Shown here in pieces: positions 45,044-60,964 of a DNA stretch of 64,000 nt. The translations under genes and the position numbers were made by a program. Under the pieces are notes generated by a model, which did not search any database, was not told the origin of the DNA, and saw only the letters and a program-made list of their open reading frames with translations. The DNA lies in IMG/VR virus record IMGVR_UViG_3300042453_005404, positions 62,001 to 126,000 of that record; one strand, given 5' to 3'. The number at the start of each line of letters is the position of its first letter. The stretch's first letter is position 1.

Positions 45044-45064
45044 TTTATGCCGCCGCCTTATTCA

Positions 45065-45280: not shown

Positions 45281-45345
45281 GCCACGAACAGGCAAAGATC
45301 GTTTCTATTTCGCTTGTCACGGTACTTCAAACAAGTAGGAACAGC

Positions 45346-45570
45346 ATGATCGATCATTTGAAACTAGGTATGCTATTCGAATCAAAATGCGATTTCAAAT
45401 GTCTCGCAAGCACAAGTAATACACCAGTTCCACCAGTAGTTACCATTGAAAAAGGAGATCTTTTGGTTTTGATTGATTTCGAGGGTTATGAACATTATAG
45501 GTTTCTAGCCCCTGATGGTTCTACTGTGACAATGTATGGAACTTACAACTTAAAGAAAGTAGAAGAATGA
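45346..45570 (+). CDS. Divergent SH3-like family member
   Basis: LKLGMLF...IEKGDLLVLID...RFLAPDG. Confidence 0.5.
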   Translation: MIDHLKLGMLFESKCDFKCLASTSNTPVPPVVTIEKGDLLVLIDFEGYEHYRFLAPDGSTVTMYGTYNLKKVEE

Positions 45571-45767
45571 TTCATAAAGTATACATCGTTCGTTGTTCGT
45601 ATTGTCAAACTCCATTGTGTGAACCTCACGGTTTGGATCATCGACCCAGATATTTTTATCAACTTGATAGTATTCCACAAGCTATGAGTGAAGCAAACTG
45701 GGGTACAGTAAACGGATTGCAAGTTTGCAATCGTTGCCTAGAACGGCATCAACGATCAGAGTTTTAA
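45567..45767 (+). CDS. Small Zn-finger protein
   Basis: CSYC...CNRC. Confidence 0.55.
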   Translation: MIHKVYIVRCSYCQTPLCEPHGLDHRPRYFYQLDSIPQAMSEANWGTVNGLQVCNRCLERHQRSEF

Positions 45768-45770
45768 ACC

Positions 45771-45805
45771 TTTATATTTAACAAAACATCTGATATCCTA
45801 ACATC
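45771..45805 (+). promoter_or_regulatory. Leaderless sigma70-like promoter
   Basis: TTTATA-17-TATCCT-6-ATG(45806). Confidence 0.7.
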
Positions 45806-46960: not shown

Positions 46961-47011
46961 ACCCTTGAAATCATAGAGAAAAAACGTTAACAAAAAAAGG
47001 TAAAAAATACC

Positions 47012-47046
47012 TTTAGATATTCGTTAACGTTTGGTATTCTATGAGT
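47012..47046 (+). promoter_or_regulatory. Leaderless sigma70-like promoter
   Basis: TTTAGA-17-TATTCT-6-ATG(47047). Confidence 0.8.
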
Positions 47047-48117
47047 ATGAAGATCGGAATCGAAATCGAGTTCTACAGTCCCAAAAACATCACCGACACC
47101 ATTGCGGCTCTTCGTCGCAAGGTTCGTGGTCTTTCTATTGGTAGCTACGGTAGCTCTGGTTGGAAGATCGTGAGTGATGGTTCTCTTGCAACCATCGATA
47201 GCTTTCACGGCATGGAGCTTGTGTCTCCTGTGCTTGATACCGACAAGGCTGCTAACCTGCGCATGGTTCGCAAGGTGTGCGCTGCGTTGCAAGCTATGGG
47301 TAGCACGGTGAATAACTGCTGCGGTCTGCATGTTCATGTGGATGGTACCGATCTGTCGGTTGAGCAGATTAAGACGATTTTTCATCGCTATACCAAGTTT
47401 GAGGGTATGATCGATCTCATGGTTCCTGCTAATCGGCGTGGTACTAACGTGTACTATACCAAGGGTGGTACCAACATCATCAACAATGTGGAAAACTGTC
47501 AAACCATGAACGCTCTTATGCGTGTGCTGCCTGATCGTTACTACAAGGTGAACCTGTGTGCTCTGGGTCGTCATGGCACGATTGAGTTTCGGCAACACTC
47601 TGGGTCGATCAATGCGGATACCATTCTTAACTGGGTTGAGTTTCTTACTTCGTTTGTCGAAGCTTCCAAGATCACTCCTGCGGCTCCGCAACGTGCTCTT
47701 CGTGGTCGTCCGGCTTCTGGTACGGGCATGGCTGCTGGTTGCCGCAAGGTTTACGATGTGTTCATGGCTTCATACAACAACGGTGGTGGTACCTTGTACC
47801 TTGCCACGATTGCTAACCGTACCGGTCTTGCCATTAACAGCGTAAAGGTTGCAATCTCGACTCTTAAGACCAAGCACGGGATTGTGATTAAGAAGACTGC
47901 TGGACAGCAGCGTGGTGCTACCAACCCGATGTACACGATTGCAAACCCTCATGCGCAGCCTCGTTTGAATCCTGTGCGTTCTACTCGTAGCACTGCCAGT
48001 GCTCCCGCTACTCCTACTGACACGATTTGGCGTGGTGTTAGCAAGACTCTCAAGGCTTACTACGTCGAGCGCATTCAAGAGCTTTCGGGCTTCGGTGTTC
48101 AGAACGTTTCGCTGTGA
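47047..48117 (+). CDS. Putative amidoligase (Amidoligase_2/COOH-NH2 ligase) with C-terminal wHTH-like domain
   Basis: IGIEIEF, WKIVSDGSL, ELVSPVL, CGLHVHV, RYYKVN, TIEFRQHSG. Confidence 0.85.
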   Translation: MKIGIEIEFYSPKNITDTIAALRRKVRGLSIGSYGSSGWKIVSDGSLATIDSFHGMELVSPVLDTDKAANLRMVRKVCAALQAMGSTVNNCCGLHVHVDGTDLSVEQIKTIFHRYTKFEGMIDLMVPANRRGTNVYYTKGGTNIINNVENCQTMNALMRVLPDRYYKVNLCALGRHGTIEFRQHSGSINADTILNWVEFLTSFVEASKITPAAPQRALRGRPASGTGMAAGCRKVYDVFMASYNNGGGTLYLATIANRTGLAINSVKVAISTLKTKHGIVIKKTAGQQRGATNPMYTIANPHAQPRLNPVRSTRSTASAPATPTDTIWRGVSKTLKAYYVERIQELSGFGVQNVSL

Positions 48118-48449
48118 TGGTTGATGAAATGAACAATCTGCAACTTGGCAAAATGTATTTGGTTAAAGAGCTTTTCTGGCTTCTTTATCCAACGAAAGGT
48201 CTGGCAGGAGGGGCTGCGGACGGCTTCGGGGGGCATGGTTGGCGGTTGAAGAAGCTGACGACTGCTTATGAAACTGCAAAATGGGAGAGCGAAAGTTTCA
48301 ACTGCAATGTTGATGTTGTTGAAGAAAACACTTGCTTTGTTTTGCTTGAAGTAGACAACGGTTATTTCAAACTTCTTAACTCAAACGGTAACATTGGTTG
48401 GACTTGGGGTAGGGATTTCTTCGAGCATTTCGAACTTGTCAAGGAATAA
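48114..48449 (+). CDS. Hypervariable SH3-like protein, subfamily A copy 1
   Basis: LGKMYLVKE.FW.LYPTK-[variable]-CNV.VVEENTC.VLLE...GNIGW...FELVKE. Confidence 0.85.
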   Translation: MMVDEMNNLQLGKMYLVKELFWLLYPTKGLAGGAADGFGGHGWRLKKLTTAYETAKWESESFNCNVDVVEENTCFVLLEVDNGYFKLLNSNGNIGWTWGRDFFEHFELVKE

Positions 48450-48452
48450 GCA

Positions 48453-48767
48453 ATGAACAATCTGCAACTTGGTAAGATGTATTTGGTTAAAGAGTTTTTC
48501 TGGTTTCTTTTTCCAACAAAAGAACTAGCGGAGCGCCAGTGCAGGTGGTCGAGGGCGGGGGCCTCGACATCGGGGGCGACGGGGGTGGCAAAAGTGTTAA
48601 GCCAAAATTTTAAATGCAACATTTTTGTTGTTGAACCAAAGACTTGCTTTGTTTTGCTTGAAGTAGATGATGATTATTACAAGCTTCTTGACTCAAATGG
48701 TAACATTGGTTGGATTTTTAGTTGGGATTTCTCTGGTTGTTTCGAACTTGTAAAGGATTTATGTTGA
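48453..48767 (+). CDS. Hypervariable SH3-like protein A2
   Basis: Same framework; G-rich insert 48528-48587. Confidence 0.85.
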   Translation: MNNLQLGKMYLVKEFFWFLFPTKELAERQCRWSRAGASTSGATGVAKVLSQNFKCNIFVVEPKTCFVLLEVDDDYYKLLDSNGNIGWIFSWDFSGCFELVKDLC

Positions 48768-48798
48768 GAATATTTTCAGAGTATGATATACTTTTGAT
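48764..48798 (+). promoter_or_regulatory. Leaderless sigma70-like promoter (duplicated at 49431)
   Basis: TTGAGA-17-TATACT-6-ATG(48799). Confidence 0.8.
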
Positions 48799-49116
48799 AT
48801 GCTACAAATCGGTAAGATGTATTTGGTTAAAGAGTATTTCTGGTTTCTTTTTCCAACAAAAGAACTGGCGGTGGGGGCGATCGATCGCTTCGAGGGGCGG
48901 GCGTCGCAGGGCTGGGCGGCGACGGGGGCGGTGGTGGCAAAAGTGTTAAGCGAACGTTATAAATGCAACATTTTTGTTGTTGAACCAAAGACTTGCGTTG
49001 TTTTGCTTGAAATGGATGAAACCGAACATTGCTATAAGCTTCTTGATTGTAATGGAAACATTGGTTGGACTCGTTGTTGGAGTTTCGCCTCCTATTTCGA
49101 GCTTGTAAAGGAATAA
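48799..49116 (+). CDS. Hypervariable SH3-like protein A3
   Basis: Same framework; insert 48865-48936 is 57/72 GC. Confidence 0.85.
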   Translation: MLQIGKMYLVKEYFWFLFPTKELAVGAIDRFEGRASQGWAATGAVVAKVLSERYKCNIFVVEPKTCVVLLEMDETEHCYKLLDCNGNIGWTRCWSFASYFELVKE

Positions 49117-49122
49117 GCAACA

Positions 49123-49434
49123 ATGCAACTTGGTAAGATGTATTTGGTTAAAGATTGGTTTTGGTTTCTTTATCCAACAAAAGAACTGGCAAGGACGCCT
49201 GCGGCGAAGGCGAGCAGGGCGATGCGGCCCACGAGGGCGAGGGCGGGGATGGATGCGAAATGGTTGAGCCAAGAATTTAAATGCAACGTTGGTGTTGTTG
49301 AACCAAACACTTGCGTTGTGTTGCTTGAAGTAGATAATGGTTATTTTAAGCTTCTTGATTCGAATGGTAACATTGGTTGGATTATTTGTTGGAATGTCTC
49401 CAAAAATTTCGAACTTGTAAGGGATTTATGTTGA
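49123..49434 (+). CDS. Hypervariable SH3-like protein A4
   Basis: Same framework; insert 49191-49258. Confidence 0.85.
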   Translation: MQLGKMYLVKDWFWFLYPTKELARTPAAKASRAMRPTRARAGMDAKWLSQEFKCNVGVVEPNTCVVLLEVDNGYFKLLDSNGNIGWIICWNVSKNFELVRDLC

Positions 49435-49465
49435 GAATATTTTCAGAGTATGATATACTTTTGAT
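49431..49465 (+). promoter_or_regulatory. Leaderless sigma70-like promoter
   Basis: TTGAGA-17-TATACT-6-ATG(49466). Confidence 0.8.
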
Positions 49466-49711
49466 ATGCTACAAATCGGTAAGATGTATAAAGTTCCGTG
49501 GTATGTTGAAGCTGACGAGTACATAGCTGGACGACTGATTGAGCGAATCAAACTAAAAGATGGCGATCTTGTTGTTGTTGTTAGCATGGAAGAATACCGT
49601 ATGGGCGGGGAGATTCGTTGGGACACAAAACTGCTGACAGGTGACGGAAGACTTGTATACGTTTCGATATCGCAACCGGGGTCTGCATACTGGAAAAAAG
49701 CACATGAATAG
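49466..49711 (+). CDS. Divergent SH3-like family member
   Basis: MLQIGKMY...LKDGDLVVVV...KLLTGDG. Confidence 0.7.
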   Translation: MLQIGKMYKVPWYVEADEYIAGRLIERIKLKDGDLVVVVSMEEYRMGGEIRWDTKLLTGDGRLVYVSISQPGSAYWKKAHE

Positions 49712-50003
49712 AAATCTTCAAATCGGAAAGCTGTATAAAACACCTTGGAAGACTTCTTCTTACGGAGCTTACATCAAGTTTGATGATCATGGCATGGTGC
49801 CTGACTACAACAGAAGCATCGACCTTCCAGATGGCGCATATGTTGTTTTGCTTGAAGTTAACGTGAATAAAGCTGAATATTTCTATAACAATAGAAAAGC
49901 CAACACATACGTTCTTAAGGTTCTAACAGAGGATGGTGCTGTTGCATATGTTACGTGCACAGAAGCTGGTTTGGATTACTGGAAAAAGGTTGTTCGTCCA
50001 TAA
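49704..50003 (+). CDS. Divergent SH3-like family member
   Basis: LQIGKLY...VVLLEV...KVLTEDG; start at MNRNLQ. Confidence 0.7.
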   Translation: MNRNLQIGKLYKTPWKTSSYGAYIKFDDHGMVPDYNRSIDLPDGAYVVLLEVNVNKAEYFYNNRKANTYVLKVLTEDGAVAYVTCTEAGLDYWKKVVRP

Positions 50004-50017
50004 AACTTAGTTAATCC

Positions 50018-50052
50018 TTTAGATATTCATATTCTTATGGTATTCTATATAT
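50018..50052 (+). promoter_or_regulatory. Leaderless sigma70-like promoter
   Basis: TTTAGA-17-TATTCT-6-ATG(50053). Confidence 0.8.
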
Positions 50053-50427
50053 ATGAAGCAGAAGAAGGCTGTTGTTCGTCGCAAAGGTTCGGTTTCCAGC
50101 AAAGTCAAACAACTGGATTGGATCATGCAGTTTATCATTCGCATGAATCCTTGTGCGATTTGTGGTGGTTCCTTGGCTGATGGGTACAATCCTCGTTATC
50201 CGGGTAAAAGCATCACGCTGCATCATTCCATCGGAAGCCGTGAAGTTGACGATTGGGAGAATCTGGAGTATGTAGCTGGTATGGTGCTGTGTCATTCTAC
50301 ATGCCACAAGAGCTATCATTTGAAGCGCAGACACATGGATGCGGGCAAGGATGTAAACGAGGGCGAGGTTGCGATCATGGAAAGCAATATTGCCAAGGTT
50401 GTGAAGAAGCAGAGGAAAGTAAAATGA
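50053..50427 (+). CDS. HNH endonuclease-like protein
   Basis: CAICG...TLHH...LCH..CH..YH. Confidence 0.7.
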   Translation: MKQKKAVVRRKGSVSSKVKQLDWIMQFIIRMNPCAICGGSLADGYNPRYPGKSITLHHSIGSREVDDWENLEYVAGMVLCHSTCHKSYHLKRRHMDAGKDVNEGEVAIMESNIAKVVKKQRKVK

Positions 50428-50642
50428 ATCACACGATTGGAAAAATGCATCAGTTTGTAGCCGTTCAACTACCGATTTATAATAGGATCGGAGACGTTCC
50501 GTTTGCTTACTTGGTACAGAATGAAGTTGTTGTTTTTCTTTCGAAAACAGATAAATACGTAAAGGTACTATTTGACGATGGCACCGTTGGAATAGTGCCT
50601 TATTTTCCAGAACGTGATCATTGGGTTGAATACACCGGTTAG
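50424..50642 (+). CDS. Divergent SH3-like family member
   Basis: TIGKMH...VVVFLS...VKVLFDDG.VG; start at MNHTIG. Confidence 0.65.
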   Translation: MNHTIGKMHQFVAVQLPIYNRIGDVPFAYLVQNEVVVFLSKTDKYVKVLFDDGTVGIVPYFPERDHWVEYTG

Positions 50643-50656
50643 GAGAACGTAAAACA

Positions 50657-50986
50657 ATGTCCGAATATATTGAATCCGAGACAAACTGTTGGAACAAATC
50701 ACCAATGAAACAAGGTAAACTGTATTACGGGCTTTGTGATCGAGAGGTGATCGAAGAAAAGCTTTTACCTCATTTTTTTGATGCTCATGAGATCAATGAT
50801 GTGATTGAGGTAGTAGACGCAGCATCACCGGTTGTATTCTTGGAAAAGACAATCACAAGGCGAGAGGATGGATACGGTGGTAGAGAAAGGTATCAAACCT
50901 TTATAAAGATTCTTACACCTGCTGGAAATATTGGTTGGGTTGTTTGGTTTGAAGGCGATTGGAAGGAAGTAAAATCATGTCAATAA
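50657..50986 (+). CDS. Divergent SH3-like family member
   Basis: QGKLYY...VVFLEK...KILTPAGNIGWV. Confidence 0.7.
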   Translation: MSEYIESETNCWNKSPMKQGKLYYGLCDREVIEEKLLPHFFDAHEINDVIEVVDAASPVVFLEKTITRREDGYGGRERYQTFIKILTPAGNIGWVVWFEGDWKEVKSCQ

Positions 50987-51321
50987 CATTCTACGATCAG
51001 AACAATCCAGCAAAGTACAACGATGATGGAGATCAAATCGGTGGTGGTATCGAAGTAAACTTCGCAAACGGCAACGCATACACTGTGCTTTCTCTCATGG
51101 GTTTGTGCGGCAAAGATAATCCCGATCTTTGTGGAGAAATGAACGGTCACGACTTTCGTAAATGCGCATATCGTGCGTTAGCAACGTTGGATATGATAAA
51201 TGATGAAAGTCGATTTAACGTTGATCCCATCGATGTAGCACAACATTGGGGATACGCAAAAGAACGAATCAAACGGCTTTTAACGGTTTTTGCCGACGCT
51301 GAAACTGTTTGTTGGGGGTAA
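50977..51321 (+). CDS. Hypothetical protein
   Basis: EVNFANGNA..VL..MGL pattern; coupled start. Confidence 0.6.
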   Translation: MSITFYDQNNPAKYNDDGDQIGGGIEVNFANGNAYTVLSLMGLCGKDNPDLCGEMNGHDFRKCAYRALATLDMINDESRFNVDPIDVAQHWGYAKERIKRLLTVFADAETVCWG

Positions 51322-51323
51322 AG

Positions 51324-51486
51324 GTGGCATACTTTACCATAGGTAAACTGTATCAAAACGTTACAAAAAACGAAGCTTCTTGCTGATGATGGCACAGTTT
51401 ATCAGGCAGCGATTTTGAAAAACACACGTTACATACAAATCTGGTTTAAACCCGTTTCGTCATTTTCGGACATAGTTAAGTTATGA
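51324..51486 (+). pseudogene. Possible deleted/frameshifted SH3-like family remnant
   Basis: Frame 1 TIGKLYQ joins, after an A6 run (51365-70), frame 2 KLLADDGTVY; middle of the domain absent. Confidence 0.4.
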
Positions 51487-51828
51487 ATGATAAAAATATT
51501 GACAGGTGCCGAGCTAGTTCCCGGCAAAATGTATACTATTTGGGGGCGTTTGAATCGTGATACGTGGCCCGCATATCATCAACGACCAACTCTTCAATCA
51601 CCATCAACTGTTGCAACTGTTGCTCCATTGTTTCCATTGGAGCCATTTGTGTTTTTAGAACGCACGCCAAGTGAGTTTAGATGGAATGAAACCGATCCAA
51701 TGTATGACTACAAAATATTGACTTGTGACGGCGTTGTGGGCTGGCTATGCTTTCATGACGATGATTTGTCTGCTTTGGGTATTGGTTTTCGTGAATATGA
51801 TCCAAAAGACTTTGAAGTAAACCTTTAA
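51487..51828 (+). CDS. Divergent SH3-like family member
   Basis: LVPGKMY...FVFLE...KILTCDGVVGWL. Confidence 0.7.
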   Translation: MIKILTGAELVPGKMYTIWGRLNRDTWPAYHQRPTLQSPSTVATVAPLFPLEPFVFLERTPSEFRWNETDPMYDYKILTCDGVVGWLCFHDDDLSALGIGFREYDPKDFEVNL

Positions 51829-51868
51829 ATCGTAGCAACAACTTGATATACTAAAACTAGTTAAACCT

Positions 51869-51979
51869 ATGAGCATTCAAAGCATAATTTCTGCCACAGT
51901 GTTTGCAAGTGTTTTCTTTTTGTGGATATTCACTTGTCCAATGATAACACACAAAAAGTGTTGCTGTTGTAAAAACTAA
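51869..51979 (+). CDS. Small membrane peptide with Cys-rich tail (36 aa)
   Basis: Hydrophobic helix then KKCCCCKN; promoter TTTAAA(51824)-17-TATACT upstream. Confidence 0.4.
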   Translation: MSIQSIISATVFASVFFLWIFTCPMITHKKCCCCKN

Positions 51980-51995
51980 CAAAAGGAAGCAAATC

Positions 51996-52193
51996 GTGCG
52001 TAACTATGAAAAACAAAAAGATCTTGTTAATGCCAATCTTGTTGAAGGTGAGTTGATCAACTACAAAAACAAAGTTTGCAGAGTTTCTATATCCCGTGGT
52101 GGCCCTTTAGACAAACCAAAAGTAAGTGTTGTTTTAACTCCTATGCCTCAAATCACAATCACAGAAGACACAGAAATCATTGTTTCTACATAA
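51996..52193 (+). CDS. Hypothetical protein
   Basis: AAGGA RBS, GTG start. Confidence 0.5.
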   Translation: MRNYEKQKDLVNANLVEGELINYKNKVCRVSISRGGPLDKPKVSVVLTPMPQITITEDTEIIVST

Positions 52194-52328
52194 ACGTTTA
52201 TGACTTTCCGCCATGAGCTTTATGTTGTTTTTTGGATTGTTGTTGTTTTGTACGCATATGCGTTAGGTTTCGCACTCGCAAAATGCTAATATGCCTTGAT
52301 TACAAGCACAAACAAAAAATAAAATACC

Positions 52329-52363
52329 TTTAGATGTTCATGAACATATGATATTCTATATGC
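52329..52363 (+). promoter_or_regulatory. Leaderless sigma70-like promoter
   Basis: TTTAGA-17-TATTCT-6-ATG(52364). Confidence 0.8.
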
Positions 52364-53503
52364 ATGATGAACGTTCACCCGGCTCTTCGTTTCTCGTTTG
52401 ACCATCTTCGCACGGCTCTTATGACCCGTGTGGATTCTGGTGCAATCAACATCACTCGCAAGGGTTCTCTGGCCCTTTTCAACTATTCCAAGGATTGTCA
52501 GTTTGAGCATCTTTGGGATGATTATACCATCATGGCCCGTGGTCTTATTCTCGACATGGAGAATGAGTCTATTGTGGCTCTTCCTTTTCCCAAGTTCTTC
52601 AATGCGTCGGAGAAGGAGGGTGCTAGTGTTGTCAAGTTTGATGCTCCCTTTGATGCGTATACCAAGATGGACGGATCGCTGGGTATCGTGTATTTCCACA
52701 ATGGTTCATGGCACGTTGCAACCCGTGGTTCGTTTACGTCCGAACAGTCTGTGTGGGCAGAGAAGTGGCTGCACGATAACCTCAAGCCTTATCACCAGCT
52801 TGATCAGAATGTGACATATCTTTGTGAGATTATCTATGACAGCAACCGTATTGTTATCAACTACCCTTTTGAGGGTTTGGTGATGCTTGGTGCTTATAAC
52901 CGTGTTACCGGCATTGAGCTTGACTATGATCGTGATTTGCGTCCGTTGTGTGAGCGTATCGGTATGATGCTTGCAGAGCGTCACCAGTTCACTTCATTTG
53001 TTGCTGCACAGGAGTTTGTCAAGACTCTTCCCGGCAACGAGGAAGGTTTCGTTATTCGTTTTCGGGATTCTGGCGAGCGTGTAAAGCTCAAGGGTTCTGA
53101 ATATTGCTCTTTGCACAAGATGATTAGCAACATTACTCCTTTGGCTATCTGGGAGCTTTTGTGTGCGGGTTACTCCATTGAAGATTACAAGAAGGCTTTG
53201 CCGGAAGAGTTTTGGGATGAGGTTGACGAGATTGTTGGTCATTTCCAGCGTCGTGCTGCTTGTGTTATGCTGGATGTTGTGAACCTTTATTCCGAGGTTT
53301 CTGATTTGTCTGACAAGGATCTTGGTTTGAAGCTGGCTGGCGAGTTCAAGCGTCGTGAGAATGCTTCGTTGCTGTTCCCTTATCGTAAGAAGGGAACGGC
53401 TTTGGTTCACGGTTTGGTGATGAAGTCTTTGCGGCCTACTGGAAACGTGATTGAGGGATATGTGCCGTCTGCCATGCTCCAGCGTTCTCAGTCGGAGGAA
53501 TGA
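52364..53503 (+). CDS. RNA ligase (T4 Rnl1-like)
   Basis: ARGLI...PFPKFFN, KMDGSLG, ATRGSF, EGFVI, VKLKG.EY. Confidence 0.9.
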   Translation: MMNVHPALRFSFDHLRTALMTRVDSGAINITRKGSLALFNYSKDCQFEHLWDDYTIMARGLILDMENESIVALPFPKFFNASEKEGASVVKFDAPFDAYTKMDGSLGIVYFHNGSWHVATRGSFTSEQSVWAEKWLHDNLKPYHQLDQNVTYLCEIIYDSNRIVINYPFEGLVMLGAYNRVTGIELDYDRDLRPLCERIGMMLAERHQFTSFVAAQEFVKTLPGNEEGFVIRFRDSGERVKLKGSEYCSLHKMISNITPLAIWELLCAGYSIEDYKKALPEEFWDEVDEIVGHFQRRAACVMLDVVNLYSEVSDLSDKDLGLKLAGEFKRRENASLLFPYRKKGTALVHGLVMKSLRPTGNVIEGYVPSAMLQRSQSEE

Positions 53504-53505
53504 TC

Positions 53506-53811
53506 ATGCAACTCGGCAAGATGTATTTGGTTAAAGAGCTTTTCTGGTTTCTTTATCCAACAAAAGAACGGGCGGAGTATGGGCGTGCGAGGGCGGCGTC
53601 CGTTGCGGCGATGGCGTGGCGGTGGGCGGCGAATAATGCAAAAGTGTTAAGCGAACGTTATAAATGCAACGTTTTTGTTGTTGAAGAAAACACTTGCGTT
53701 GTTTTGCTTGAAGTAGATGATGATTATTACAAGTTTCTTGATTGTAATGGAAACATTGGTTGGATTATTTGTCGGGATTTCTCCAACTATTTCGAGATTG
53801 CAAAGGAATAA
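53506..53811 (+). CDS. Hypervariable SH3-like protein A5
   Basis: Same framework; insert 53569-53631. Confidence 0.85.
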   Translation: MQLGKMYLVKELFWFLYPTKERAEYGRARAASVAAMAWRWAANNAKVLSERYKCNVFVVEENTCVVLLEVDDDYYKFLDCNGNIGWIICRDFSNYFEIAKE

Positions 53812-53817
53812 GCAACA

Positions 53818-54138
53818 ATGCAACTTGGTAAGATGTATTTGGTTAAAGAGCTTTTCTGGCTTCTCTTTCCAACAAAAGAAGTAGCGTGCGACCTTATGGC
53901 GATAGGCTGGGACAGCCCACTGGAGGCAACAGTGGAGAAGGGGCAGGCTTATCAAGAAGCAGACTATATAAGTGAACATATGTGTTGCGACGTTGCTGTG
54001 GTGGAAGAAAATACTTGTTTTGTGTTGCTTGAGCAAGATGAAAAGCTTTTCAAACTTCTTGATTGCAACGGTAACATTGGTTGGATATGGTGTAGGTGTT
54101 TGTCTTTTTCCAAGTATTTCGAACTTGTAAAGGAATAA
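53818..54138 (+). CDS. Hypervariable SH3-like protein A6
   Basis: Same framework; insert less GC-rich. Confidence 0.85.
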   Translation: MQLGKMYLVKELFWLLFPTKEVACDLMAIGWDSPLEATVEKGQAYQEADYISEHMCCDVAVVEENTCFVLLEQDEKLFKLLDCNGNIGWIWCRCLSFSKYFELVKE

Positions 54139-54144
54139 GCAACA

Positions 54145-54447
54145 ATGCAACTTGGTAAGATGTATTTGGTTAAAGAGTATTATTGGTTTATGTTTCCAAC
54201 AAAAGAACTAGCGGAGGCCATCGCCGCTGGACGGCGGGCGCTGGCCGCACTCGATGCGGGCGCTGCGGGACGGAGGGTGGCGAGCGAAGATTATAACTGC
54301 AACAACGTTTCTTTTGTTGAAGAAAACACTTACGTTGTTTTGCTTGAACAAGACAATGATTATATCAAAATTCTTGACTCAAATGGAAACATTGGTTGGA
54401 TTGTTTGTTGGGATTTTTCCGACTTTTTCGAACTTGTAAAGGAATAA
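54145..54447 (+). CDS. Hypervariable SH3-like protein A7
   Basis: Same framework; insert from 54211. Confidence 0.85.
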   Translation: MQLGKMYLVKEYYWFMFPTKELAEAIAAGRRALAALDAGAAGRRVASEDYNCNNVSFVEENTYVVLLEQDNDYIKILDSNGNIGWIVCWDFSDFFELVKE

Positions 54448-54453
54448 GCAACA

Positions 54454-54750
54454 ATGCAACTTGGTAAGATGTATCGTTTTACAGAAAGAGCAAAACGAGC
54501 TTGCATAAGGTATGCAATCAAAAACCGTTGGCCTCTCACGTTCTCTTCCGAGGTTAGTCTCGCAAAAGGTCGAGTGCGGGCGCAATATCCATTGGATTCA
54601 TGCATTGTTGTGTTAGAGTCTCACGAAACAACAACTTCTGGAAAGCTTTTGTCTGGTAAAACATCACGCAGACTTAAGGTTTTACTTCCTGATGGTAAGA
54701 TTGGTACGATGTATGTGGATACAACAGAATGGGAACAGGTAACTGAATGA
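54454..54750 (+). CDS. Divergent SH3-like family member sharing only MQLGKMY with the array
   Basis: Identical upstream junction, then divergent; KVLLPDGKIG. Confidence 0.7.
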   Translation: MQLGKMYRFTERAKRACIRYAIKNRWPLTFSSEVSLAKGRVRAQYPLDSCIVVLESHETTTSGKLLSGKTSRRLKVLLPDGKIGTMYVDTTEWEQVTE

Positions 54751-54814
54751 TTATGGTACTTTGCTTTGCTGCTAGCCTTTGTTTGGCGATTTGCTCACGA
54801 AAGCAAATCGTTCG

Positions 54815-54994
54815 ATGAAAACCATTAAACTACCAGAAACCATTGAACGTTCAACAGTGCTACTTGTTTTTGGCTTAATCGTGTTTTCTGGCATGATCGG
54901 TTTTGCTTTTGGTGCTGATGCCGGTTATGCCAAAGGATTCCAAGATGGTTCACAAAGCCGCACTGTTTCTCCCATACCTCTTCAAATGCCCTAA
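54815..54994 (+). CDS. Small membrane protein
   Basis: TM helix followed by GY.KG..DG. Confidence 0.5.
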   Translation: MKTIKLPETIERSTVLLVFGLIVFSGMIGFAFGADAGYAKGFQDGSQSRTVSPIPLQMP

Positions 54995-55026
54995 AATCCA
55001 GCGGTTTAAGAAAAAGCAATAATACG

Positions 55027-55061
55027 TTTAGATATTCGTGAACGTATGCTATTCTAAAAGC
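55027..55061 (+). promoter_or_regulatory. Leaderless sigma70-like promoter
   Basis: TTTAGA-17-TATTCT-6-ATG(55062). Confidence 0.8.
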
Positions 55062-55256
55062 ATGAAGAACAACACGGTTTCTGCTCGTCGTCTCGCTCGT
55101 TCGATGGAGTCTAGCGTCAAGCTTATCGCTCGCAAGTTTGCACGCTTGAACGAAGCACAGCGTCTTCGTGCAATGCAGATTATTGCGAACATGGATGATC
55201 TTAGGTCGTTTGAGTCCATCGTTCGTAACTCGTTTGTGTGCAACACGGAGCTCTGA
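55062..55256 (+). CDS. Hypothetical protein
   Basis: Start defined by promoter geometry (MKNNTV). Confidence 0.6.
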   Translation: MKNNTVSARRLARSMESSVKLIARKFARLNEAQRLRAMQIIANMDDLRSFESIVRNSFVCNTEL

Positions 55257-55259
55257 AAC

Positions 55260-55466
55260 ATGGGATACGTAAAAGACATGGTGCTTCACAAGCAAGAAGA
55301 GCTTGCTGGTGAGATTCACGAAGATGCTTTTCTCGCTTATCTGGAAGAGATGGAGCAGATTCAAAACAATCACATTCTGGCAGATCATGTGATTCTTAGC
55401 AATGGCAAGCGTTGCTATATTCAAGCGAACTGTTATCCTGCTGACGGTGTGTGTGAGTGCAAGTAA
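55260..55466 (+). CDS. Hypothetical protein
   Basis: MGYVKDM.. N-terminus; TAATG-coupled to A8. Confidence 0.6.
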   Translation: MGYVKDMVLHKQEELAGEIHEDAFLAYLEEMEQIQNNHILADHVILSNGKRCYIQANCYPADGVCECK

Positions 55467-55741
55467 TGCAACTCGGTAAGATGCATTTGGTTAAAGAGTG
55501 GTTTTGGTTTCTTTATCCAACAAAAGAAAAGACGTGGCGCTCGGGGCCAGCGGCGAGGGCGGATAATGCAAAATTGTTAAGCGAACATGTCCAATGCAAC
55601 GTTTTTGTTGTTGAACCAAACACTTGTGTTGTTTTGCTTGAAGTAGATAATGGTTATTTTAAGCTTCTTGATTCAAACGGAAACATTGGTTGGATTCGTT
55701 GTTGGAGTTTCGCCTCCTATTTCGAGCTTGTAAAGGAATAA
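55466..55741 (+). CDS. Hypervariable SH3-like protein A8
   Basis: Same framework; shortest insert 55529-55561. Confidence 0.85.
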   Translation: MQLGKMHLVKEWFWFLYPTKEKTWRSGPAARADNAKLLSEHVQCNVFVVEPNTCVVLLEVDNGYFKLLDSNGNIGWIRCWSFASYFELVKE

Positions 55742-55747
55742 GCAACA

Positions 55748-56047
55748 ATGCAACTTGGTAAGATGTATTTGGTTAAAGATTGGTTTTGGTTTCTTTATCC
55801 AACAAAAGAACTGGCGATGCGTGGGCGGAGCTCGGGGGAGGGGGCGATGACGCTGGCGAACGGGCGGCTGGGCGCAGAATGGTTGAGCCAAGAATTTAAA
55901 TGCAACGTTGGTGTTGTTGAACCAAACACTTGCTTTGTCTTGCTTGAAGTAGATGAAGTATATTTCAAGGTTCTTGATTGTAATGGAAACATTGGTTGGA
56001 CTTATTGCTTTGATTTCTCTGGTTATTTCGAACTTGTAAAGGAATAA
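55748..56047 (+). CDS. Hypervariable SH3-like protein A9
   Basis: Flanks identical to A4; insert 55816-55877. Confidence 0.85.
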   Translation: MQLGKMYLVKDWFWFLYPTKELAMRGRSSGEGAMTLANGRLGAEWLSQEFKCNVGVVEPNTCFVLLEVDEVYFKVLDCNGNIGWTYCFDFSGYFELVKE

Positions 56048-56051
56048 AGCA

Positions 56052-56351
56052 ATGAACGATCTTCAACTCGGTAAGATGTATTTGGTTAAAGAGTGGTTTT
56101 GGTTTCTTTATCCAACAAAAGAACTGGCGGCGGGGTTCTCGTCGCCGTCGAGGGCGGAGTGGTGGTGTAATGCAAAAGTGTTAAGCGAACGTTATAAATG
56201 CAACGTTTTTGTTGTTGAACCAAACACTTGCGTTGTTTTGCTTGAAGTAGATAATGGTTATTTTAAGCTTCTTGATTCAAACGGTAACATTGGTTGGATA
56301 TGGTGTAGGTGTTTGGCTTTTTCCAAGCATTTCGAACTTGTCAAGGAATAA
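56052..56351 (+). CDS. Hypervariable SH3-like protein A10
   Basis: Insert 56124-56165, 13/14 codons NNG. Confidence 0.85.
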   Translation: MNDLQLGKMYLVKEWFWFLYPTKELAAGFSSPSRAEWWCNAKVLSERYKCNVFVVEPNTCVVLLEVDNGYFKLLDSNGNIGWIWCRCLAFSKHFELVKE

Positions 56352-56355
56352 AGCA

Positions 56356-56688
56356 ATGCAACTTGGTAAGATGTATTTGGTTAAAGAGTATTGTTGGTTT
56401 CTTTATCCAACAAAAGAACTGGCCTCGACGACGGGGCCACGGTGGTCGAGCGTGAGGCGGTGGCCCTCCGACGAGGAGCGCACGGTGGCTTATCGAGATG
56501 CAAAATGGTTGAGCCAAGCATTTAAATGCAACGTTGGTGTTGTTGAACCAAAAACTAGTTTTGTCTTGCTTGAACAAGACAAGGATCATTTCAAGGTTCT
56601 TGATTCAAACGGAAACATTGGTTGGATTCGTAGCGATGATTTTTCGAAAAATTTCAAGGTTTTGAATGAAAAGAAGAATAACCTTTAG
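56356..56688 (+). CDS. Hypervariable SH3-like protein A11
   Basis: Start at MQLGKMY (56356); insert from 56419. Confidence 0.85.
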   Translation: MQLGKMYLVKEYCWFLYPTKELASTTGPRWSSVRRWPSDEERTVAYRDAKWLSQAFKCNVGVVEPKTSFVLLEQDKDHFKVLDSNGNIGWIRSDDFSKNFKVLNEKKNNL

Positions 56689-56718: not shown

Positions 56719-57477
56719 ATGAAGCGAACGATTGTAATCGGTGATGTACATGGTTGCCTTGCAGAGCTCAAGGAGCTTGTTGACGAGGTTGGATATGTTC
56801 GTGGTGAGGATCGATTGATTCTTGCTGGTGATCTTGTGGATCGTGGTGTAGATTCTGCTGGAGTTGTTCGTTATGCAATGAAGATTGGTGCCGAGGCTGT
56901 TTGCGGCAATCATGACAACAAGCTTTTGCGTCGTTCCAAGCACCTTGCACGGCAGCGTAGCAATCCCGCATACGTCAACCCGATGAAGCCTTGCGAAGAC
57001 CAAGAAAACACTCTTGCGAGTCTTGGTGATGCAGAGTTGGCGTGGCTTGGATCTTTGCCTTATCATATCAAGCTTGACGAGTTTAACGCTGTTGTGGCTC
57101 ATGCTGGCATTGTTCCCGGTGTTCCTCTTGTTCGTCAACGTGATGAAGCGTTTATGATGGTTCGTTACGTTGATAAGGATAACGGCAAGATGAAGCATAT
57201 GGTTATGCCGGGATATCTTCGTCCAGAAAACAGTGATTACTGGGCAGATAAGTTTGACAGCAGCTTTGATGTTATCTTTGGCCACAACGTTGTTGGATTG
57301 AAGGATATCAAGGTTTGGGAAAACACTAACGGTGGTCGTTGCTTTGGTATCGATACTGGTTGTGTGTTTGGAGGACGCTTGAGCGCCCTTGTTATGCAAG
57401 CTCGCAGCAAGCCTTATGAGGTTATTCAAGTACAAGCACACAAGCAACACTGCGTTTCTGATCTATTTTCAGAGTGA
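56719..57477 (+). CDS. Metallophosphoesterase (ApaH/PrpA/Pnkp-phosphatase-like)
   Basis: GDVHG, GDLVDRG, GNHD, HAG, FGH, DTGC. Confidence 0.9.
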   Translation: MKRTIVIGDVHGCLAELKELVDEVGYVRGEDRLILAGDLVDRGVDSAGVVRYAMKIGAEAVCGNHDNKLLRRSKHLARQRSNPAYVNPMKPCEDQENTLASLGDAELAWLGSLPYHIKLDEFNAVVAHAGIVPGVPLVRQRDEAFMMVRYVDKDNGKMKHMVMPGYLRPENSDYWADKFDSSFDVIFGHNVVGLKDIKVWENTNGGRCFGIDTGCVFGGRLSALVMQARSKPYEVIQVQAHKQHCVSDLFSE

Positions 57478-57489
57478 AAAGAGCATAAT

Positions 57490-57883
57490 ATGGAAAACAA
57501 ACATAAGCACTTTACAGTATTCAACAATCGATGGTTTATGCTGTTTCGAGAGCAAGCAGGAGTGATTAGCGAAAGCCCTTGTTGGGTTTTGTTTTACGAC
57601 TGTTATTCGCATTACAACGAATCTTTGATCAAGCTTTTGATTGAAGCTGCAAGAGAATACAAAAGCGATAGACACCTAGCAATGTAAGTCAAAAATGAAC
57701 AACGACGAAAAGCAAAAACTTATCGACGATTTCGAAAAAGCTATTAGCGAGATTCGTGTGTTGCGTTACACTTCTCCAGATGAAGAGCTAAAAGGTCTTA
57801 GAGTTCATTTGTTTGAGAATGAATGGGATAGGTTGGAGCACACTATTAGAGAACTAAGAAAGAATGAAACCGAAGAAAGGTAA
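57490..57883 (+). CDS. Two small hypothetical proteins (57490-57687, 57695-57883)
   Basis: Consecutive co-directional ORFs. Confidence 0.5.
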
Positions 57884-58148
57884 GCTTTACACACTAGAGC
57901 TTAAATGGAACACAGATCCTGCGAATATCAGATCTGTTGCTGTATGGAATCGCAGACTTGATGTTGGTGACTTTATGGATAAATCATTAGTGATAGGCAG
58001 AATCGAATACAACAAAGATATGTTTATCTTTTTGGAAGATGGAACAAACGGATTTAGCCAAAAGAGTCCAAAGATTTTGACCAGCGATGGAGTTGTTGGG
58101 TATATTGTGCCAAACTATGATATCTGTTCGATGAAACGGGTTAAGTAG
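57864..58148 (+). CDS. Divergent SH3-like family member
   Basis: KKGKLYTL...FIFLEDG...KILTSDGVVGYI. Confidence 0.7.
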   Translation: MKPKKGKLYTLELKWNTDPANIRSVAVWNRRLDVGDFMDKSLVIGRIEYNKDMFIFLEDGTNGFSQKSPKILTSDGVVGYIVPNYDICSMKRVK

Positions 58149-59364: not shown

Positions 59365-59756
59365 CAGAGATAGAAGAAGAAAGAATGTGGCTCAAGTGTT
59401 TGGAGCTGGAACGAGAGAATAAACGTCTTCGTGAAATAATGAACATCGGATCGCTTTATACAGTGAAGAAGTATTTTTGGTTGCTTTTTCCAACAAAAGC
59501 CCTCACCGTGGGTGACGAACTGCACGCCGATGGCCACGGCCACGCCATCCCCTTCGCCGCCTTCGCCTCCATCGCCGCCGATTATTGGAGCAGACGATAC
59601 AACTGTGAAGTTACTTATTTTTGTCCTGATTCAATCGTTGTTTTCCTTGAAGAAGATGGAAATTACAAGAAAGTTCTGACTTCAGATGGAAAGATTGGTT
59701 GGATTTGGTTTGCTGAAGAATACTACAACGATTGCTTTGAGGAAGTAAATCCATGA
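59361..59756 (+). CDS. Hypervariable SH3-like protein, subfamily B copy 1 (with 26-aa N-terminal extension; core starts 59439)
   Basis: MNIGSLY.VKK.FW.LFPTK-[C-rich insert 59499-59579]-YWS...CEV.YF.PDS..VFLEEDG...KVLTSDGKIGW. Confidence 0.85.
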   Translation: MTEIEEERMWLKCLELERENKRLREIMNIGSLYTVKKYFWLLFPTKALTVGDELHADGHGHAIPFAAFASIAADYWSRRYNCEVTYFCPDSIVVFLEEDGNYKKVLTSDGKIGWIWFAEEYYNDCFEEVNP

Positions 59757-60052
59757 ACATTGGAAGCCTTTATAGGGTTAAGAAGTTTTATTGGTTGCTT
59801 TTTCCAACAAAAGAAATCGCCGCTGTAGCAGAACACCCCGCCTCCTCCCCCAGCGCCGCCGCCCTCGCCGCCGCCAGCGCCTATTGGAGCGGCCAGCTGA
59901 ACTGTGAAGTAACTTGTTTTTCTCCTGATTCCATTATTGTATTTCTTGAAGAAGATGGGAAATACAAGAAGGTTCTGACTTCTGAAGGAAGAATCGGATG
60001 GACTTGGTTTATTGAATCATATAACGAATGCTTTGAGGAAGTAAATCCATGA
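59753..60052 (+). CDS. Hypervariable SH3-like protein B2
   Basis: 16 consecutive NNC codons at 59834-59881. Confidence 0.85.
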   Translation: MNIGSLYRVKKFYWLLFPTKEIAAVAEHPASSPSAAALAAASAYWSGQLNCEVTCFSPDSIIVFLEEDGKYKKVLTSEGRIGWTWFIESYNECFEEVNP

Positions 60053-60363
60053 ACATTGGATCGCTTTATACAGTGAAGAAGTATTTTTGGTTTCTTTTTT
60101 CAACAAAAGCCGTCGCCGCCGCCGCATCCGACCCACCGTCCACCGCCGCATCCGACGCACCGTCCGCCGCCGCCGCCGGAGAAGCCGCTGCTTATTTGAG
60201 CAGACGATACGACTGTGAAGTTACTTATTTTTCTCCTGATTCCATCGTTGTTTTCCTTGAAAATGATGGAAAACTCAAGAAAGTATTGACTTCTGATGGA
60301 AAGATTGGTTGGACTTGGTTTAGTGAAACCTATAACGAATGCTTTGAGGAAGTAAATCCATGA
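60049..60363 (+). CDS. Hypervariable SH3-like protein B3
   Basis: C-rich insert with an internal 24-nt duplication. Confidence 0.85.
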   Translation: MNIGSLYTVKKYFWFLFSTKAVAAAASDPPSTAASDAPSAAAAGEAAAYLSRRYDCEVTYFSPDSIVVFLENDGKLKKVLTSDGKIGWTWFSETYNECFEEVNP

Positions 60364-60665
60364 ACATTGGATCGCTTTATACAGTGAAGAAGTGGTCTTG
60401 GTCACTTTTTCCAACAAAGGAAACTGCCGCCGCCGCCGCCGCAAGCAGCCCCGCCGCCGCAGGAGCCGCTCCCGACGCCGCTCCCGCCGCTGATTATTGG
60501 AGCAAACAGTTAAACTGCAATGTAACCTACTTTTCTCCTGATTCCTATATTGTCTTCTTGGAAGAAGATACGAAGTTCAAGAAAGTTCTTACTTCTACTG
60601 GAAAGCTTGGTTGGGTTTGGTTTGATGAAAGTTATAATCATTGTTTTGAGGAAGTATCGTCGTGA
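60360..60665 (+). CDS. Hypervariable SH3-like protein B4
   Basis: (GCC)5 run and GCCGCTCCC duplication in the insert. Confidence 0.85.
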   Translation: MNIGSLYTVKKWSWSLFPTKETAAAAAASSPAAAGAAPDAAPAADYWSKQLNCNVTYFSPDSYIVFLEEDTKFKKVLTSTGKLGWVWFDESYNHCFEEVSS

Positions 60666-60929: not shown

Positions 60930-60964
60930 TTGATATTCAGATTAACGTTTGCTATACTGTATTC
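60930..60964 (+). promoter_or_regulatory. Leaderless sigma70-like promoter
   Basis: TTGATA-17-TATACT-6-ATG(60965). Confidence 0.8.

What the first reader, a model, noticed from the sequence alone, without database searches (positions are those of the whole stretch)
49071..55933. A4 and A9: identical flanks (120 nt + 56 nt) around nearly unrelated cores
Seen: 49071-49190 is identical to 55696-55815 (end of the previous gene, intergenic TAAGCAACA, and the start through GAACTGGC). 49259-49314 is identical to 55878-55933. The cores between them (49191-49258, 68 nt; 55816-55877, 62 nt) differ in length and share little beyond (A/G)GG GCG ATG at the same codon position. Zero substitutions in 176 flanking nt beside a saturated core indicates either targeted replacement or hypermutation of the core, or active homogenisation of the flanks.
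Basis: seen in the sequence. Interest (0 to 1): 0.85.

Follow-up and report, generated by a model that had tools for sequence, protein, structure and literature searches.

The report
Phage gene family with hypervariable GC-rich cores
Two copies of a small, tandemly repeated phage gene share identical flanks because the copies keep overwriting each other's conserved parts by recombination, while each keeps its own unalignable GC-rich middle segment; this architecture is shared by a large, undescribed family of phage mini-proteins.

Summary
It is not a misassembly, because independent assemblies carry both genes.

A4 and A9 are two of 11 tandem paralogues of about 100 aa in three arrays of an uncultured 260-kb freshwater jumbo phage. 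At least 7 more copies lie elsewhere in the genome, plus a sister family, B.

Each gene has AT-rich conserved flanks (33-39% GC) and a 33-90 nt core (60-80% GC). The core is built from the phage's rarest codons: GCG, GGG, CGG and AGG make up 70-74% of their codon families there, against 7-9% in ordinary genes.

Relatives decide the interpretation:
- The A4 core is unchanged in strains whose A4 left flank differs.
- The converted tract has a different extent in a 99%-identical strain.
- The same cores occur with different left flanks.

So the flanks are homogenised by frequent gene conversion or unequal crossover, and tracts stop at the non-homologous cores. No core hypermutation is needed for A4/A9.

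Cores do change in jumps between strains, through short tandem duplications, indels and compensated frameshifts. A DGR, silent donor cassettes, hairpins, G-quadruplexes and a shared motif were tested and found no support.

The protein is predicted to be an SH3b-like barrel carrying the core as a helix-loop-helix excursion. Its function is unknown; a diversified binder is inferred.

The parts
49071..49190 (+). 120-nt tract identical to 55696-55815: last 46 nt of A3, the stop codon, 6 nt of spacer, and the 68-nt left flank of A4
49191..49258 (+).
   Evidence: conserved in L011, L016 and L023
49259..49314 (+). 56-nt tract identical to 55878-55933 (start of the right flank)
55696..55815 (+). Partner of the 120-nt tract: end of A8, spacer, and left flank of A9
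55816..55877 (+). A9 core (57-nt GC-rich part at 55816-55872, 77% GC); a 24-mer from it occurs only once in all of IMG/VR
55878..55933 (+). Partner of the 56-nt tract
48138..49434 (+). Array 1, downstream of the amidoligase gene: A1 48138-48449, A2 48462-48767, A3 48802-49116, A4 49123-49434
53506..54447 (+). Array 2, downstream of the RNA ligase gene: A5 53506-53811, A6 53818-54138, A7 54145-54447
55466..56688 (+). Array 3, upstream of the metallophosphoesterase gene: A8 55466-55741, A9 55748-56047, A10 56061-56351, A11 56356-56688
59439..60665 (+). Sister family B, four tandem genes (about 59439-59756, 59753-60052, 60049-60363, 60360-60665). Same architecture, but the cores are C-rich (GCC)n-type and encode Ala/Pro/Ser
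48755..48822 (+). 68-nt cassette identical to 49422-49489. It contains a promoter-like TTGAGA-17-TATACT site and the MLQIGKMY start

Best explanation
A4 and A9 belong to a tandemly arrayed phage gene family. Seen as DNA, each array alternates about 245-nt homologous segments with unique GC-rich cores of 33-90 nt. One homologous segment comprises the right flank of one gene, its stop codon, a Shine-Dalgarno-like AAGGA, the next start codon and the left flank of the next gene.

Homologous recombination between these segments is frequent relative to point substitution. It takes the form of short-tract gene conversion and unequal crossover, both within and between arrays. Tracts cannot extend through the cores because the cores share no homology. 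The flanks are therefore repeatedly homogenised and re-assorted, while each core stays unique. The 120 + 56 nt A4/A9 identity is the newest such event, or pair of events.

The cores are degenerate (GCG/GGC)n-type low-complexity coding DNA; in family B they are (GCC)n-type. They change occasionally and in jumps, through short tandem duplications, indels and +1/-1 frameshift pairs. Such changes are tolerated because A/T-poor sequence rarely creates stop codons.

Shown: the identity, the mosaicism, core retention under flank replacement, the composition and codon bias, and the kinds of core mutation. Inferred: the protein is an SH3b-like scaffold that displays the core as a variable helix-loop-helix, and the family diversifies binding specificity towards host or defence targets.
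For: Family and architecture: 11 copies lie in the window, and further copies lie elsewhere in the genome.

Mosaicism: exact shared tracts of 28-120 nt connect many different pairs of copies, and none crosses a core. The 120-nt run has P<1e-5 by permutation.

Core retained while the flank is replaced: the A4 core differs by 1 nt in L016 and L023, but their left flanks are of the E[FY]FWFLF type against DWFWFLY in the window. In L023 the left flank is identical to that of A3, consistent with an unequal-crossover hybrid.

Tract extent varies between strains: L011, 99.25% identical overall, carries A8-like sequence further upstream of A4 than the window does.

The A8/A9 junction differs in L017 and L014.

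Re-association: the A10 core occurs with A9-like or A2-like left flanks, and an A7-type gene follows A1 in L028.

Copy number: L013 has 8 copies where the window has 4, and L016 has 3 where the window has 4.

Core behaviour at orthologous positions: the A10, A11, A8, A4 and A1 cores show 0-1 differences while their flanks show 0-10. The A5 position has three related but heavily rearranged cores, with flanks 90-100% identical.

Kinds of core change: compensated frameshifts, a 6-nt tandem duplication, and a 21-nt length difference (complex indel) between 100%-identical flanks. B cores contain (GCC)n and a 24-nt repeat of 2.3 copies. A distant relative has perfect 24-nt and 12-nt tandem duplications inside its core.

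Composition: cores are 60-80% GC against 33-39% in the flanks. Rare NNG codons dominate the cores. Ala, Arg and Gly, which are the three reading frames of (GCG)n, make up 48% of core residues.

Translation: 45 of the 46 unique cores have a length that is a multiple of 3, and those 45 are stop-free in frame; the exception is one aberrant 23-nt copy (L002_9092). Only 13 and 21 of the 45 have stops in the two other frames.

Generality: AT-rich flanks with 70-86% GC cores, in tandem arrays, recur in distant members of a superfamily of 318 clusters.

Fold: the AlphaFold2 model has pLDDT 90.4. Its best structural matches are SH3/SH3b domains, and the family profile hits multi-SH3_3 proteins.

Background: high GC content raises slippage-type mutation and recombination rates in yeast (PMC6064992, abstract seen).
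Against: - The direction and number of conversion events cannot be resolved. The 46-nt gene-end segment looks native to A8, while the spacer looks native to A3/A4, so more than one event or an unsampled donor is required.
- No relative carrying the A9 core was found, so its history is unknown.
- Slippage plus conversion does not by itself explain why third codon positions stay G (family A) or C (family B) across deep divergence in a 39% GC genome. Selection or an unknown bias must contribute.
- A cores are not detected as tandem repeats by Tandem Repeats Finder.
- The function is entirely inferred. The structural matches have weak E-values (0.007 or higher), and Pfam SH3 models do not hit the proteins directly.
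Confidence: 0.7

Rival explanations
1. Cassette import. A single recombination event of about 240 nt made the A3/A4 and A8/A9 regions identical. One core was then swapped for a diverged allele from a co-infecting relative, by double crossover in the conserved flanks. The population would thus hold a pool of cores that are exchanged as units.
For: Core differences are all-or-none at some orthologous positions while the flanks stay similar (A5 and A9 positions). An A7-type gene sits in array 1 of L028. The A9 core is seen only in this strain.
Against: For A4, the core is the old element and the left flank the new one. The alternative cores at the A5 position are related to each other by indels rather than being foreign. 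No example was found of one core at two different positions with both flanks different, apart from A7 in L028.
Confidence: 0.15
2. Dedicated core-targeted diversification. An enzyme system, either DGR-like mutagenic retrohoming or an unknown break-and-fill process with G/C-biased synthesis, rewrites the core between fixed boundaries.
For: The core codon usage is extreme and non-native (NNG in family A, NNC in family B). The left boundary at GAACTGGC is sharp. Some orthologous cores are unalignable between nearly identical flanks.
Against: Core lengths range from 33 to 90 nt, whereas DGR variable regions keep their length. No second copy of either core exists in the 260-kb genome or in the loci held. 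No reverse transcriptase was seen among the window proteins scanned. Several cores are identical across strains whose flanks differ, and the A11-type core evolves slowly across distant relatives. The right boundary is fuzzy, with family-wide subtypes. Intermediate states show ordinary duplications and frameshifts.
Confidence: 0.07
3. Assembly artefact. The repeats caused chimeric joins, so the identical flanks belong to a single locus.
For: Tandem repeats of about 310 nt are hard to assemble from short reads.
Against: Gene order and sequence are identical in independent assemblies from other samples (18,186 nt at 100% identity, plus a 121-kb contig). Related strains show the same positions with the expected divergence.
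Confidence: 0.03
4. Purifying selection alone. The flanks are identical because of nucleotide-level constraint (ribosome-binding site, start region, protein sequence), with no recombination.
For: The gene end encodes the Shine-Dalgarno-like AAGGA for the next gene, and many flank columns are invariant.
Against: Flank synonymous divergence among paralogues averages 0.42 (range 0.09-0.81), so the flanks are free to vary. The other A4/A9 flank segments are 15% diverged. Flank type changes between close strains while the core stays the same.
Confidence: 0.03

Closest known systems
Concerted evolution of tandem multigene families with a hypervariable central region (for example T. cruzi MASP, PMC2691823, and sea-urchin 185/333, PMC1988830; abstracts seen)
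   Same: Conserved 5' and 3' parts with a strikingly variable, repeat-like middle. Tandem arrays, mosaic recombination and copy-number change.
   Different: Here the family is in a bacteriophage and the genes are only about 100 aa. The variable part is a compositional island of 60-80% GC, made of the genome's rarest codons, within 35% GC flanks.
Cassette-based antigenic variation by gene conversion (Neisseria pilE/pilS, Borrelia vlsE; from general knowledge)
   Same: Conserved sequences flanking variable segments act as substrates for recombination.
   Different: There is no expression site versus silent donors: every copy is a complete ORF with its own start. No donor copy of the A4 or A9 core exists in the genome. 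G-quadruplex motifs are not enriched.
Diversity-generating retroelements (from general knowledge)
   Same: A phage-borne, localised hypervariable stretch within an otherwise conserved protein.
   Different: The length varies, no template repeat was found, no reverse transcriptase was seen, and the differences are not restricted to adenine positions.
Coding trinucleotide or low-complexity tracts that evolve by slippage (homocodon runs, polyalanine tracts; PMC8113271 abstract)
   Same: Codon-homogeneous Ala-rich tracts, internal tandem duplications, and length changes in multiples of 3.
   Different: The tracts are GC-rich in an AT-rich genome. They are degenerate, are read in shifting frames, and are kept at one fixed position across a whole superfamily.
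Bacterial SH3 (SH3b, Pfam SH3_3) domains
   Same: The predicted beta-barrel matches SH3/SH3b structures, and the family profile hits multi-SH3_3 proteins.
   Different: Pfam SH3 models do not hit the proteins directly. The proteins are stand-alone, with an N-terminal hairpin and the variable helical excursion.
Mobile GC clusters in yeast mitochondrial genes and Rickettsia palindromic elements inserted in frame (from general knowledge)
   Same: Short translated GC-rich islands inside AT-rich coding sequence.
   Different: There is no palindromic folding beyond what composition gives. The cores sit at a fixed homologous position in one superfamily only. No target-site duplication or inverted-repeat ends were noticed on reading the boundaries (not formally tested).

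Membership tests
Tandem multigene family under gene conversion / unequal crossover | Patchwork of identical tracts shared between different pairs of paralogues, longer than divergence predicts | tested here: met
   Exact shared tracts of 28-120 nt link many pairs. Permutation P<1e-5 for the 120-nt run.
Tandem multigene family under gene conversion / unequal crossover | Segments of one gene have different histories, and tracts differ between close strains | tested here: met
   The A4 core and right flank are conserved while the left flank is swapped. L011 has a longer tract. L023 carries an A3-left/A4-core hybrid.
Tandem multigene family under gene conversion / unequal crossover | Copy-number variation of the array between relatives | tested here: met
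   8 against 4 copies (L013) and 3 against 4 copies (L016).
Diversity-generating retroelement target | Template repeat nearly identical to the variable region | tested here: not met
   No second copy of the A9 24-mer or the A4 18-mer exists in the 260-kb genome. No shared 13-mers were found in the window or loci. Exact-match searches are a weak test for a template that differs at adenines.
Diversity-generating retroelement target | Variable regions of constant length that differ at template adenine positions | tested here: not met
   Cores are 33-90 nt long and are unalignable.
Diversity-generating retroelement target | Reverse transcriptase gene nearby | tested here: inconclusive
   None was found among the window proteins scanned. 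Not all ORFs were scanned, and about 155 kb of the genome was not examined.
Silent-cassette antigenic variation (pilE/pilS type) | Promoterless donor cassettes that carry the variable segments | tested here: not met
   Each core is single-copy in the genome. All copies are complete ORFs.
Slippage-driven coding low-complexity tract | Internal tandem repeats and codon-homogeneous runs | tested here: met
   B cores contain (GCC)n of about 22 units and 24-, 18-, 12- and 9-nt repeats. L040 has perfect 24-nt and 12-nt duplications. A cores are only degenerate: GCG is 16% of core codons, and Tandem Repeats Finder makes no call.
Slippage-driven coding low-complexity tract | Length polymorphism between orthologues by small indels or duplications | tested here: met
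   a 6-nt duplication, a 21-nt length difference (complex indel), and +1/-1 frameshift pairs.
Bacterial SH3 domain (Pfam SH3_3) | Match to the Pfam model above the gathering score | tested here: not met
   No Pfam hit at E<=0.01 for A4 or A9.
Bacterial SH3 domain (Pfam SH3_3) | SH3-type beta-barrel fold and remote profile similarity | tested here: inconclusive
   The top Foldseek hits are SH3/SH3b, but with E>=0.007. The family profile hits multi-SH3_3 proteins at E 1e-10 to 1e-16, summed over repeats.
Mobile GC-rich palindromic insert (mitochondrial GC cluster / RPE type) | Stable hairpin or palindrome | tested here: not met
   Mean folding z-score is -0.03 over 46 cores.
Mobile GC-rich palindromic insert (mitochondrial GC cluster / RPE type) | Scattered insertion into unrelated genes, with presence/absence polymorphism | tested here: not met
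   14 of the 19 GC-rich islands in the window, and all the strand-skewed ones, lie at the homologous position of family A or B genes.

The most novel reading that the evidence does not exclude
The GC-rich, nearly stop-free cores built from rare NNG or NNC codons are an evolved evolvability cassette. On this reading they form a self-diversifying loop library on an SH3b-like scaffold, driven by slippage, tandem duplication and compensated frameshifts. Second-order selection would maintain the library across a large phage superfamily, and recombination in the conserved flanks would shuffle it among copies and strains. Its purpose would be to track variable host or defence targets. This would be a template-free counterpart of diversity-generating retroelements.
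Probability: 0.25. Interest if true: 0.8.

Novelty: new variant of a known kind. Interest (0 to 1): 0.55.

Why it matters
Phages are known to diversify binding proteins with retroelements (DGRs) and by exchanging modules. This locus suggests a third, simpler route.

Arrays of about 100-aa SH3b-like proteins carry a central segment that is a compositional island, prone to slippage and tolerant of frameshifts. Their conserved flanks act as recombination handles.

The same architecture recurs in hundreds of uncharacterised clusters found only in metagenomic phage contigs. The family has no Pfam or PHROG model. It could be a sizeable unrecognised class of host-interaction or counter-defence proteins.

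It also offers a natural case for testing whether local GC content and codon choice are selected for mutability.

For genome annotation, such arrays create long identical tracts beside unalignable cores, and this should not be read as misassembly or as evidence of a DGR.

Tried and rejected
- **RNA/DNA hairpins in the cores.** Folding 46 unique cores against dinucleotide shuffles gave a mean z-score of -0.03, with one core below -2. Rejected.
- **A shared motif or Chi-like site.** CGAGGGCGG looked recurrent, but no k-mer exceeds codon-phase-preserving shuffles. Rejected.
- **G-quadruplexes as recombination initiators.** 4 of 46 cores have a canonical motif, against 6.3 expected. Rejected.
- **DGR template or silent donor cassette.** Both cores are single-copy in the whole genome and in the loci held. 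Rejected, with the caveat that exact matching is a weak test for a DGR template.
- **Host-derived GC-rich DNA.** No family relative was found in 185,579 species genomes. The nearest cultured phages infect low-GC Flavobacterium or Microcystis, at about 30% amino-acid identity. The uniform codon phase argues against random capture. Not supported, but cores were not searched directly against bacterial genomes.
- **A simple deaminase-type A-to-G bias.** Both A and T are depleted at third positions. Rejected.
- **Known family assignment.** There is no Pfam, PHROG or INPHARED match for the proteins or the DNA. Literature searches found no description of the family.
- **The profile hit to a 2,733-aa SprB-repeat protein** was treated as repeat-driven and was not used.


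Full report
**1. The observation**

The window's 49071-49190 and 55696-55815 are identical (120/120). So are 49259-49314 and 55878-55933 (56/56). Identity ends exactly at all four edges.

The intervening 68 and 62 nt align at 0.59 identity. Shuffled cores give 0.49 +/- 0.07, with a maximum of 0.61. Both genes do carry (A/G)GG GCG ATG at codons 32-34.

The 120-nt tract is the longest exact match between any two family copies; the next is 68 nt. The non-core columns of A3+A4 and A8+A9 are 85.7% identical. No permutation out of 100,000 reached a run of 120.

**2. The context**

The window is part of IMGVR_UViG_3300042453_005404, a 260,466-bp uncultured freshwater phage.
- It has myovirus baseplate proteins.
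- It has no nucleotide match or close protein match among 50,697 deposited phages.
- The nearest cultured relatives are Flavobacterium and Microcystis phages, at about 30% identity in a baseplate protein.

A4 and A9 are two of 11 paralogous genes of about 100 aa on the + strand, arranged in three arrays:
- A1-A4 at 48138-49434, after an amidoligase gene.
- A5-A7 at 53506-54447, after a T4 Rnl1-like RNA ligase gene.
- A8-A11 at 55466-56688, before a metallophosphoesterase gene.

At least seven more copies lie elsewhere in the same genome (loci L002 and L003).

A sister family B forms a four-gene array at 59439-60665.

Both exact proteins, in the same order, occur in independent assemblies. One is 18,186 nt at 100% identity from another sample, one is a 121-kb contig, and one is a 2.3-kb contig at 99.25%. 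The structure is therefore real.

**3. Anatomy of a family member**

Each gene has three parts:
- A 68-nt left flank, encoding MQLGKMYLVKEwFWFLYPTKELA.
- A core of 33-90 nt.
- A right flank of about 175 nt, encoding AKvLSErYKCNVfVVEPNTCvVLLEVDngYfKLLDSNGNIGWI..FELVKE.

The gene end contains an AAGGA located 10 nt before the next ATG.

Flanks are 33-39% GC and cores are 60-80% GC. Of the 19 GC-rich islands in the 64-kb window, 14 are family A or B cores. These 14 are the only strongly strand-skewed islands.

Codon usage changes abruptly between ordinary genes of this phage and the cores:

| Measure | Ordinary genes | Cores |
|---|---|---|
| GCG as share of Ala codons | 9% | 73% |
| GGG as share of Gly codons | 7% | 70% |
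| CGG + AGG as share of Arg codons | 7% | 74% |
| G at third codon positions | 14% | about 60-85% |

Further points on the cores:
- Ala, Arg and Gly make up 48% of core residues. These are the three reading frames of (GCG)n.
- 45 of the 46 unique cores have a length that is a multiple of 3, and those 45 are stop-free in frame. The exception is one aberrant 23-nt copy (L002_9092).
- Only 13 and 21 of the 45 have stops in the two other frames. The cores are therefore translated, yet largely open in every frame.
- Family B cores are the complementary type. They are C-rich (GCC)n tracts encoding Ala/Pro/Ser, and contain recent internal tandem repeats such as a 24-nt unit of 2.3 copies at 93% match.

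**4. What relatives show**

Sixteen JGI loci and several ENA contigs cover the arrays at 90-99% identity.

(a) Cores are not generally hypermutable.
- A10, A11, A8, A4 and A1 cores show 0-1 differences where their flanks show 0-10.
- The A11-type core persists in distant relatives with a handful of mostly non-synonymous changes.

(b) Flanks are swapped around stable cores.
- The A4 core occurs with three different left flanks: the window/L011 type (DWFWFLY, identical to A9), an A2-like type in L016, and a type identical to A3 in L023. The last is consistent with an unequal-crossover hybrid.
- The A10 core occurs with A9-like or A2-like left flanks.

(c) The A4/A9 tract is itself polymorphic.
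- In L011 the A8-like sequence extends further upstream of A4 than in the window.
- In L017 and L014 the A8/A9 junction has a different sequence (MNNLQ-type start).
- The 46-nt gene-end segment looks native to A8, while the spacer looks native to A3/A4. More than one event is therefore needed.

(d) The arrays gain and lose copies: 8 against 4 in L013 and 3 against 4 in L016. In L028 an A7-type gene follows A1.

(e) Between paralogues the cores sit at the shuffle baseline (median identity 0.53) while flanks are 75-85% identical. Flank synonymous divergence averages 0.42 and dN/dS is 0.52.

**5. How cores change**

Among 13 pairs whose flanks are at least 98% identical, 5 have cores of only 65-90% identity. 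At the first position after the RNA ligase gene, three related but heavily rearranged cores of 63, 84 and 90 nt occur.

The differences are of these kinds:
- A 6-nt tandem duplication.
- A 21-nt length difference (a complex indel) between 100%-identical flanks.
- +1/-1 frameshift pairs that re-read the same DNA in another frame, for example VVAAAR against WRRRRR.

A distant relative has perfect 24-nt and 12-nt tandem duplications inside its core.

So cores evolve in jumps by slippage-type events. Such events are tolerated because A/T-poor sequence rarely yields stop codons.

This fits experimental work showing that high GC content raises deletion or slippage mutation and recombination rates (PMC6064992, abstract).

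**6. Alternatives tested**

- Hairpins: mean folding z-score -0.03.
- Shared motif: not above phase-preserving shuffles.
- G-quadruplexes: 4 of 46 cores against 6.3 expected.
- Donor or template copies: the A9 24-mer and A4 18-mer are single-copy in the 260-kb genome, and no shared 13-mers exist in the sequence held.
- DGR: variable core length, and no reverse transcriptase among the scanned proteins.
- Relatives in bacterial genomes: none.

**7. The protein**

An AlphaFold2 model of A4, built with a 66-sequence alignment, has pLDDT 90.4 and pTM 0.81. It shows an N-terminal beta-hairpin, a helix-loop-helix spanning the core and the conserved AKWLSQEF helix, and a five-stranded barrel.

Foldseek's best matches in the PDB and BFVD are SH3 and bacterial SH3b domains, with weak E-values of 0.007 or higher.

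A profile search of 1.84 billion representatives found 318 clusters, almost all about 100 aa. It also found multi-repeat proteins that Pfam calls SH3_3.

The distant members keep the same plan: FP(T/S)KE, then a variable Ala-rich stretch, then YWSK..NCNV. Where DNA was fetched, they also keep tandem arrays with 26-40% GC flanks and 70-86% GC cores. One member has no core.

No Pfam or PHROG model covers the family.

**8. Verdict**

Of the three suggested readings, flank homogenisation by recombination is the one supported.

The cores are genuinely unusual, but as compositionally distinct low-complexity coding tracts with saltatory slippage evolution. There is no evidence that they are targets of a demonstrated hypermutation system.

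Two things remain unexplained. The first is why third codon positions stay G or C over deep divergence. The second is what the proteins bind.

The phenomenon is a new variant of a known kind: a multigene family with a hypervariable region under concerted evolution, here in an undescribed and widespread family of phage mini-proteins.

Noticed in passing
window 59439-60665: Sister family B: four tandem genes of about 100 aa (MNIGSLYTVKKyFWLLFPTKE...IGWTWF..CFEEVNP). Their cores are C-rich (GCC)n tracts encoding Ala/Pro/Ser, the strand-complementary type to the G-rich A cores, and they contain recent internal 9-24 nt tandem repeats.
   Followed up: partly
window 48755-48822, 49422-49489 and about 60930-60958: Promoter-like cassettes (TTGAGA-17-TATACT with an upstream TG). 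The first two lie inside an identical 68-nt tract that also supplies an MLQIGKMY start. They may be mobile early-promoter modules that subdivide the arrays.
   Followed up: partly
window 49466-49711, 54454-54750, 57864-58148, 60662-60925: Degenerate or core-less relatives. They share the N-terminal G-K-(M/L)-Y strand and, in some, the ..LE.DG..K.L(T/D)..G.IG.. barrel motifs, but have no GC-rich core. Two of them directly follow arrays 1 and 2.
   Followed up: partly
window 44582-48117, 52364-53503, 56719-57477: A cluster of nucleic-acid repair-type genes interleaved with the arrays: an AAA_33 kinase, an ATP-dependent DNA ligase, an amidoligase, a T4 Rnl1-like RNA ligase and a metallophosphoesterase. 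The amidoligase-then-family order is kept in the distant 261,786-bp relative (L004).
   Followed up: partly
L004 632-2009: The related 262-kb phage carries a GIY-YIG/NUMOD3 homing-endonuclease gene and a TnsA-like endonuclease gene just after the Laminin_G_3 tail-fibre-like gene. Whether the window has them at the same place was not compared.
   Followed up: no
window 54825-55424 (minus strand): A 199-aa minus-strand ORF lies between arrays 2 and 3. A 187-aa minus-strand gene is called there in one related contig, but short plus-strand genes are called there in the assembly identical to the window. The coding status is unclear.
   Followed up: no
window 13668-17123 and 33086-35512: Two large proteins (1,151 and 808 aa) with Laminin_G_3 / concanavalin-like lectin domains, probably tail fibres or receptor-binding proteins.
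   Followed up: no
P0121: The family profile's top hit is a 2,733-aa SprB-repeat protein with 26 matched stretches. This is probably a repeat-summed artefact and is unexplained.
   Followed up: partly
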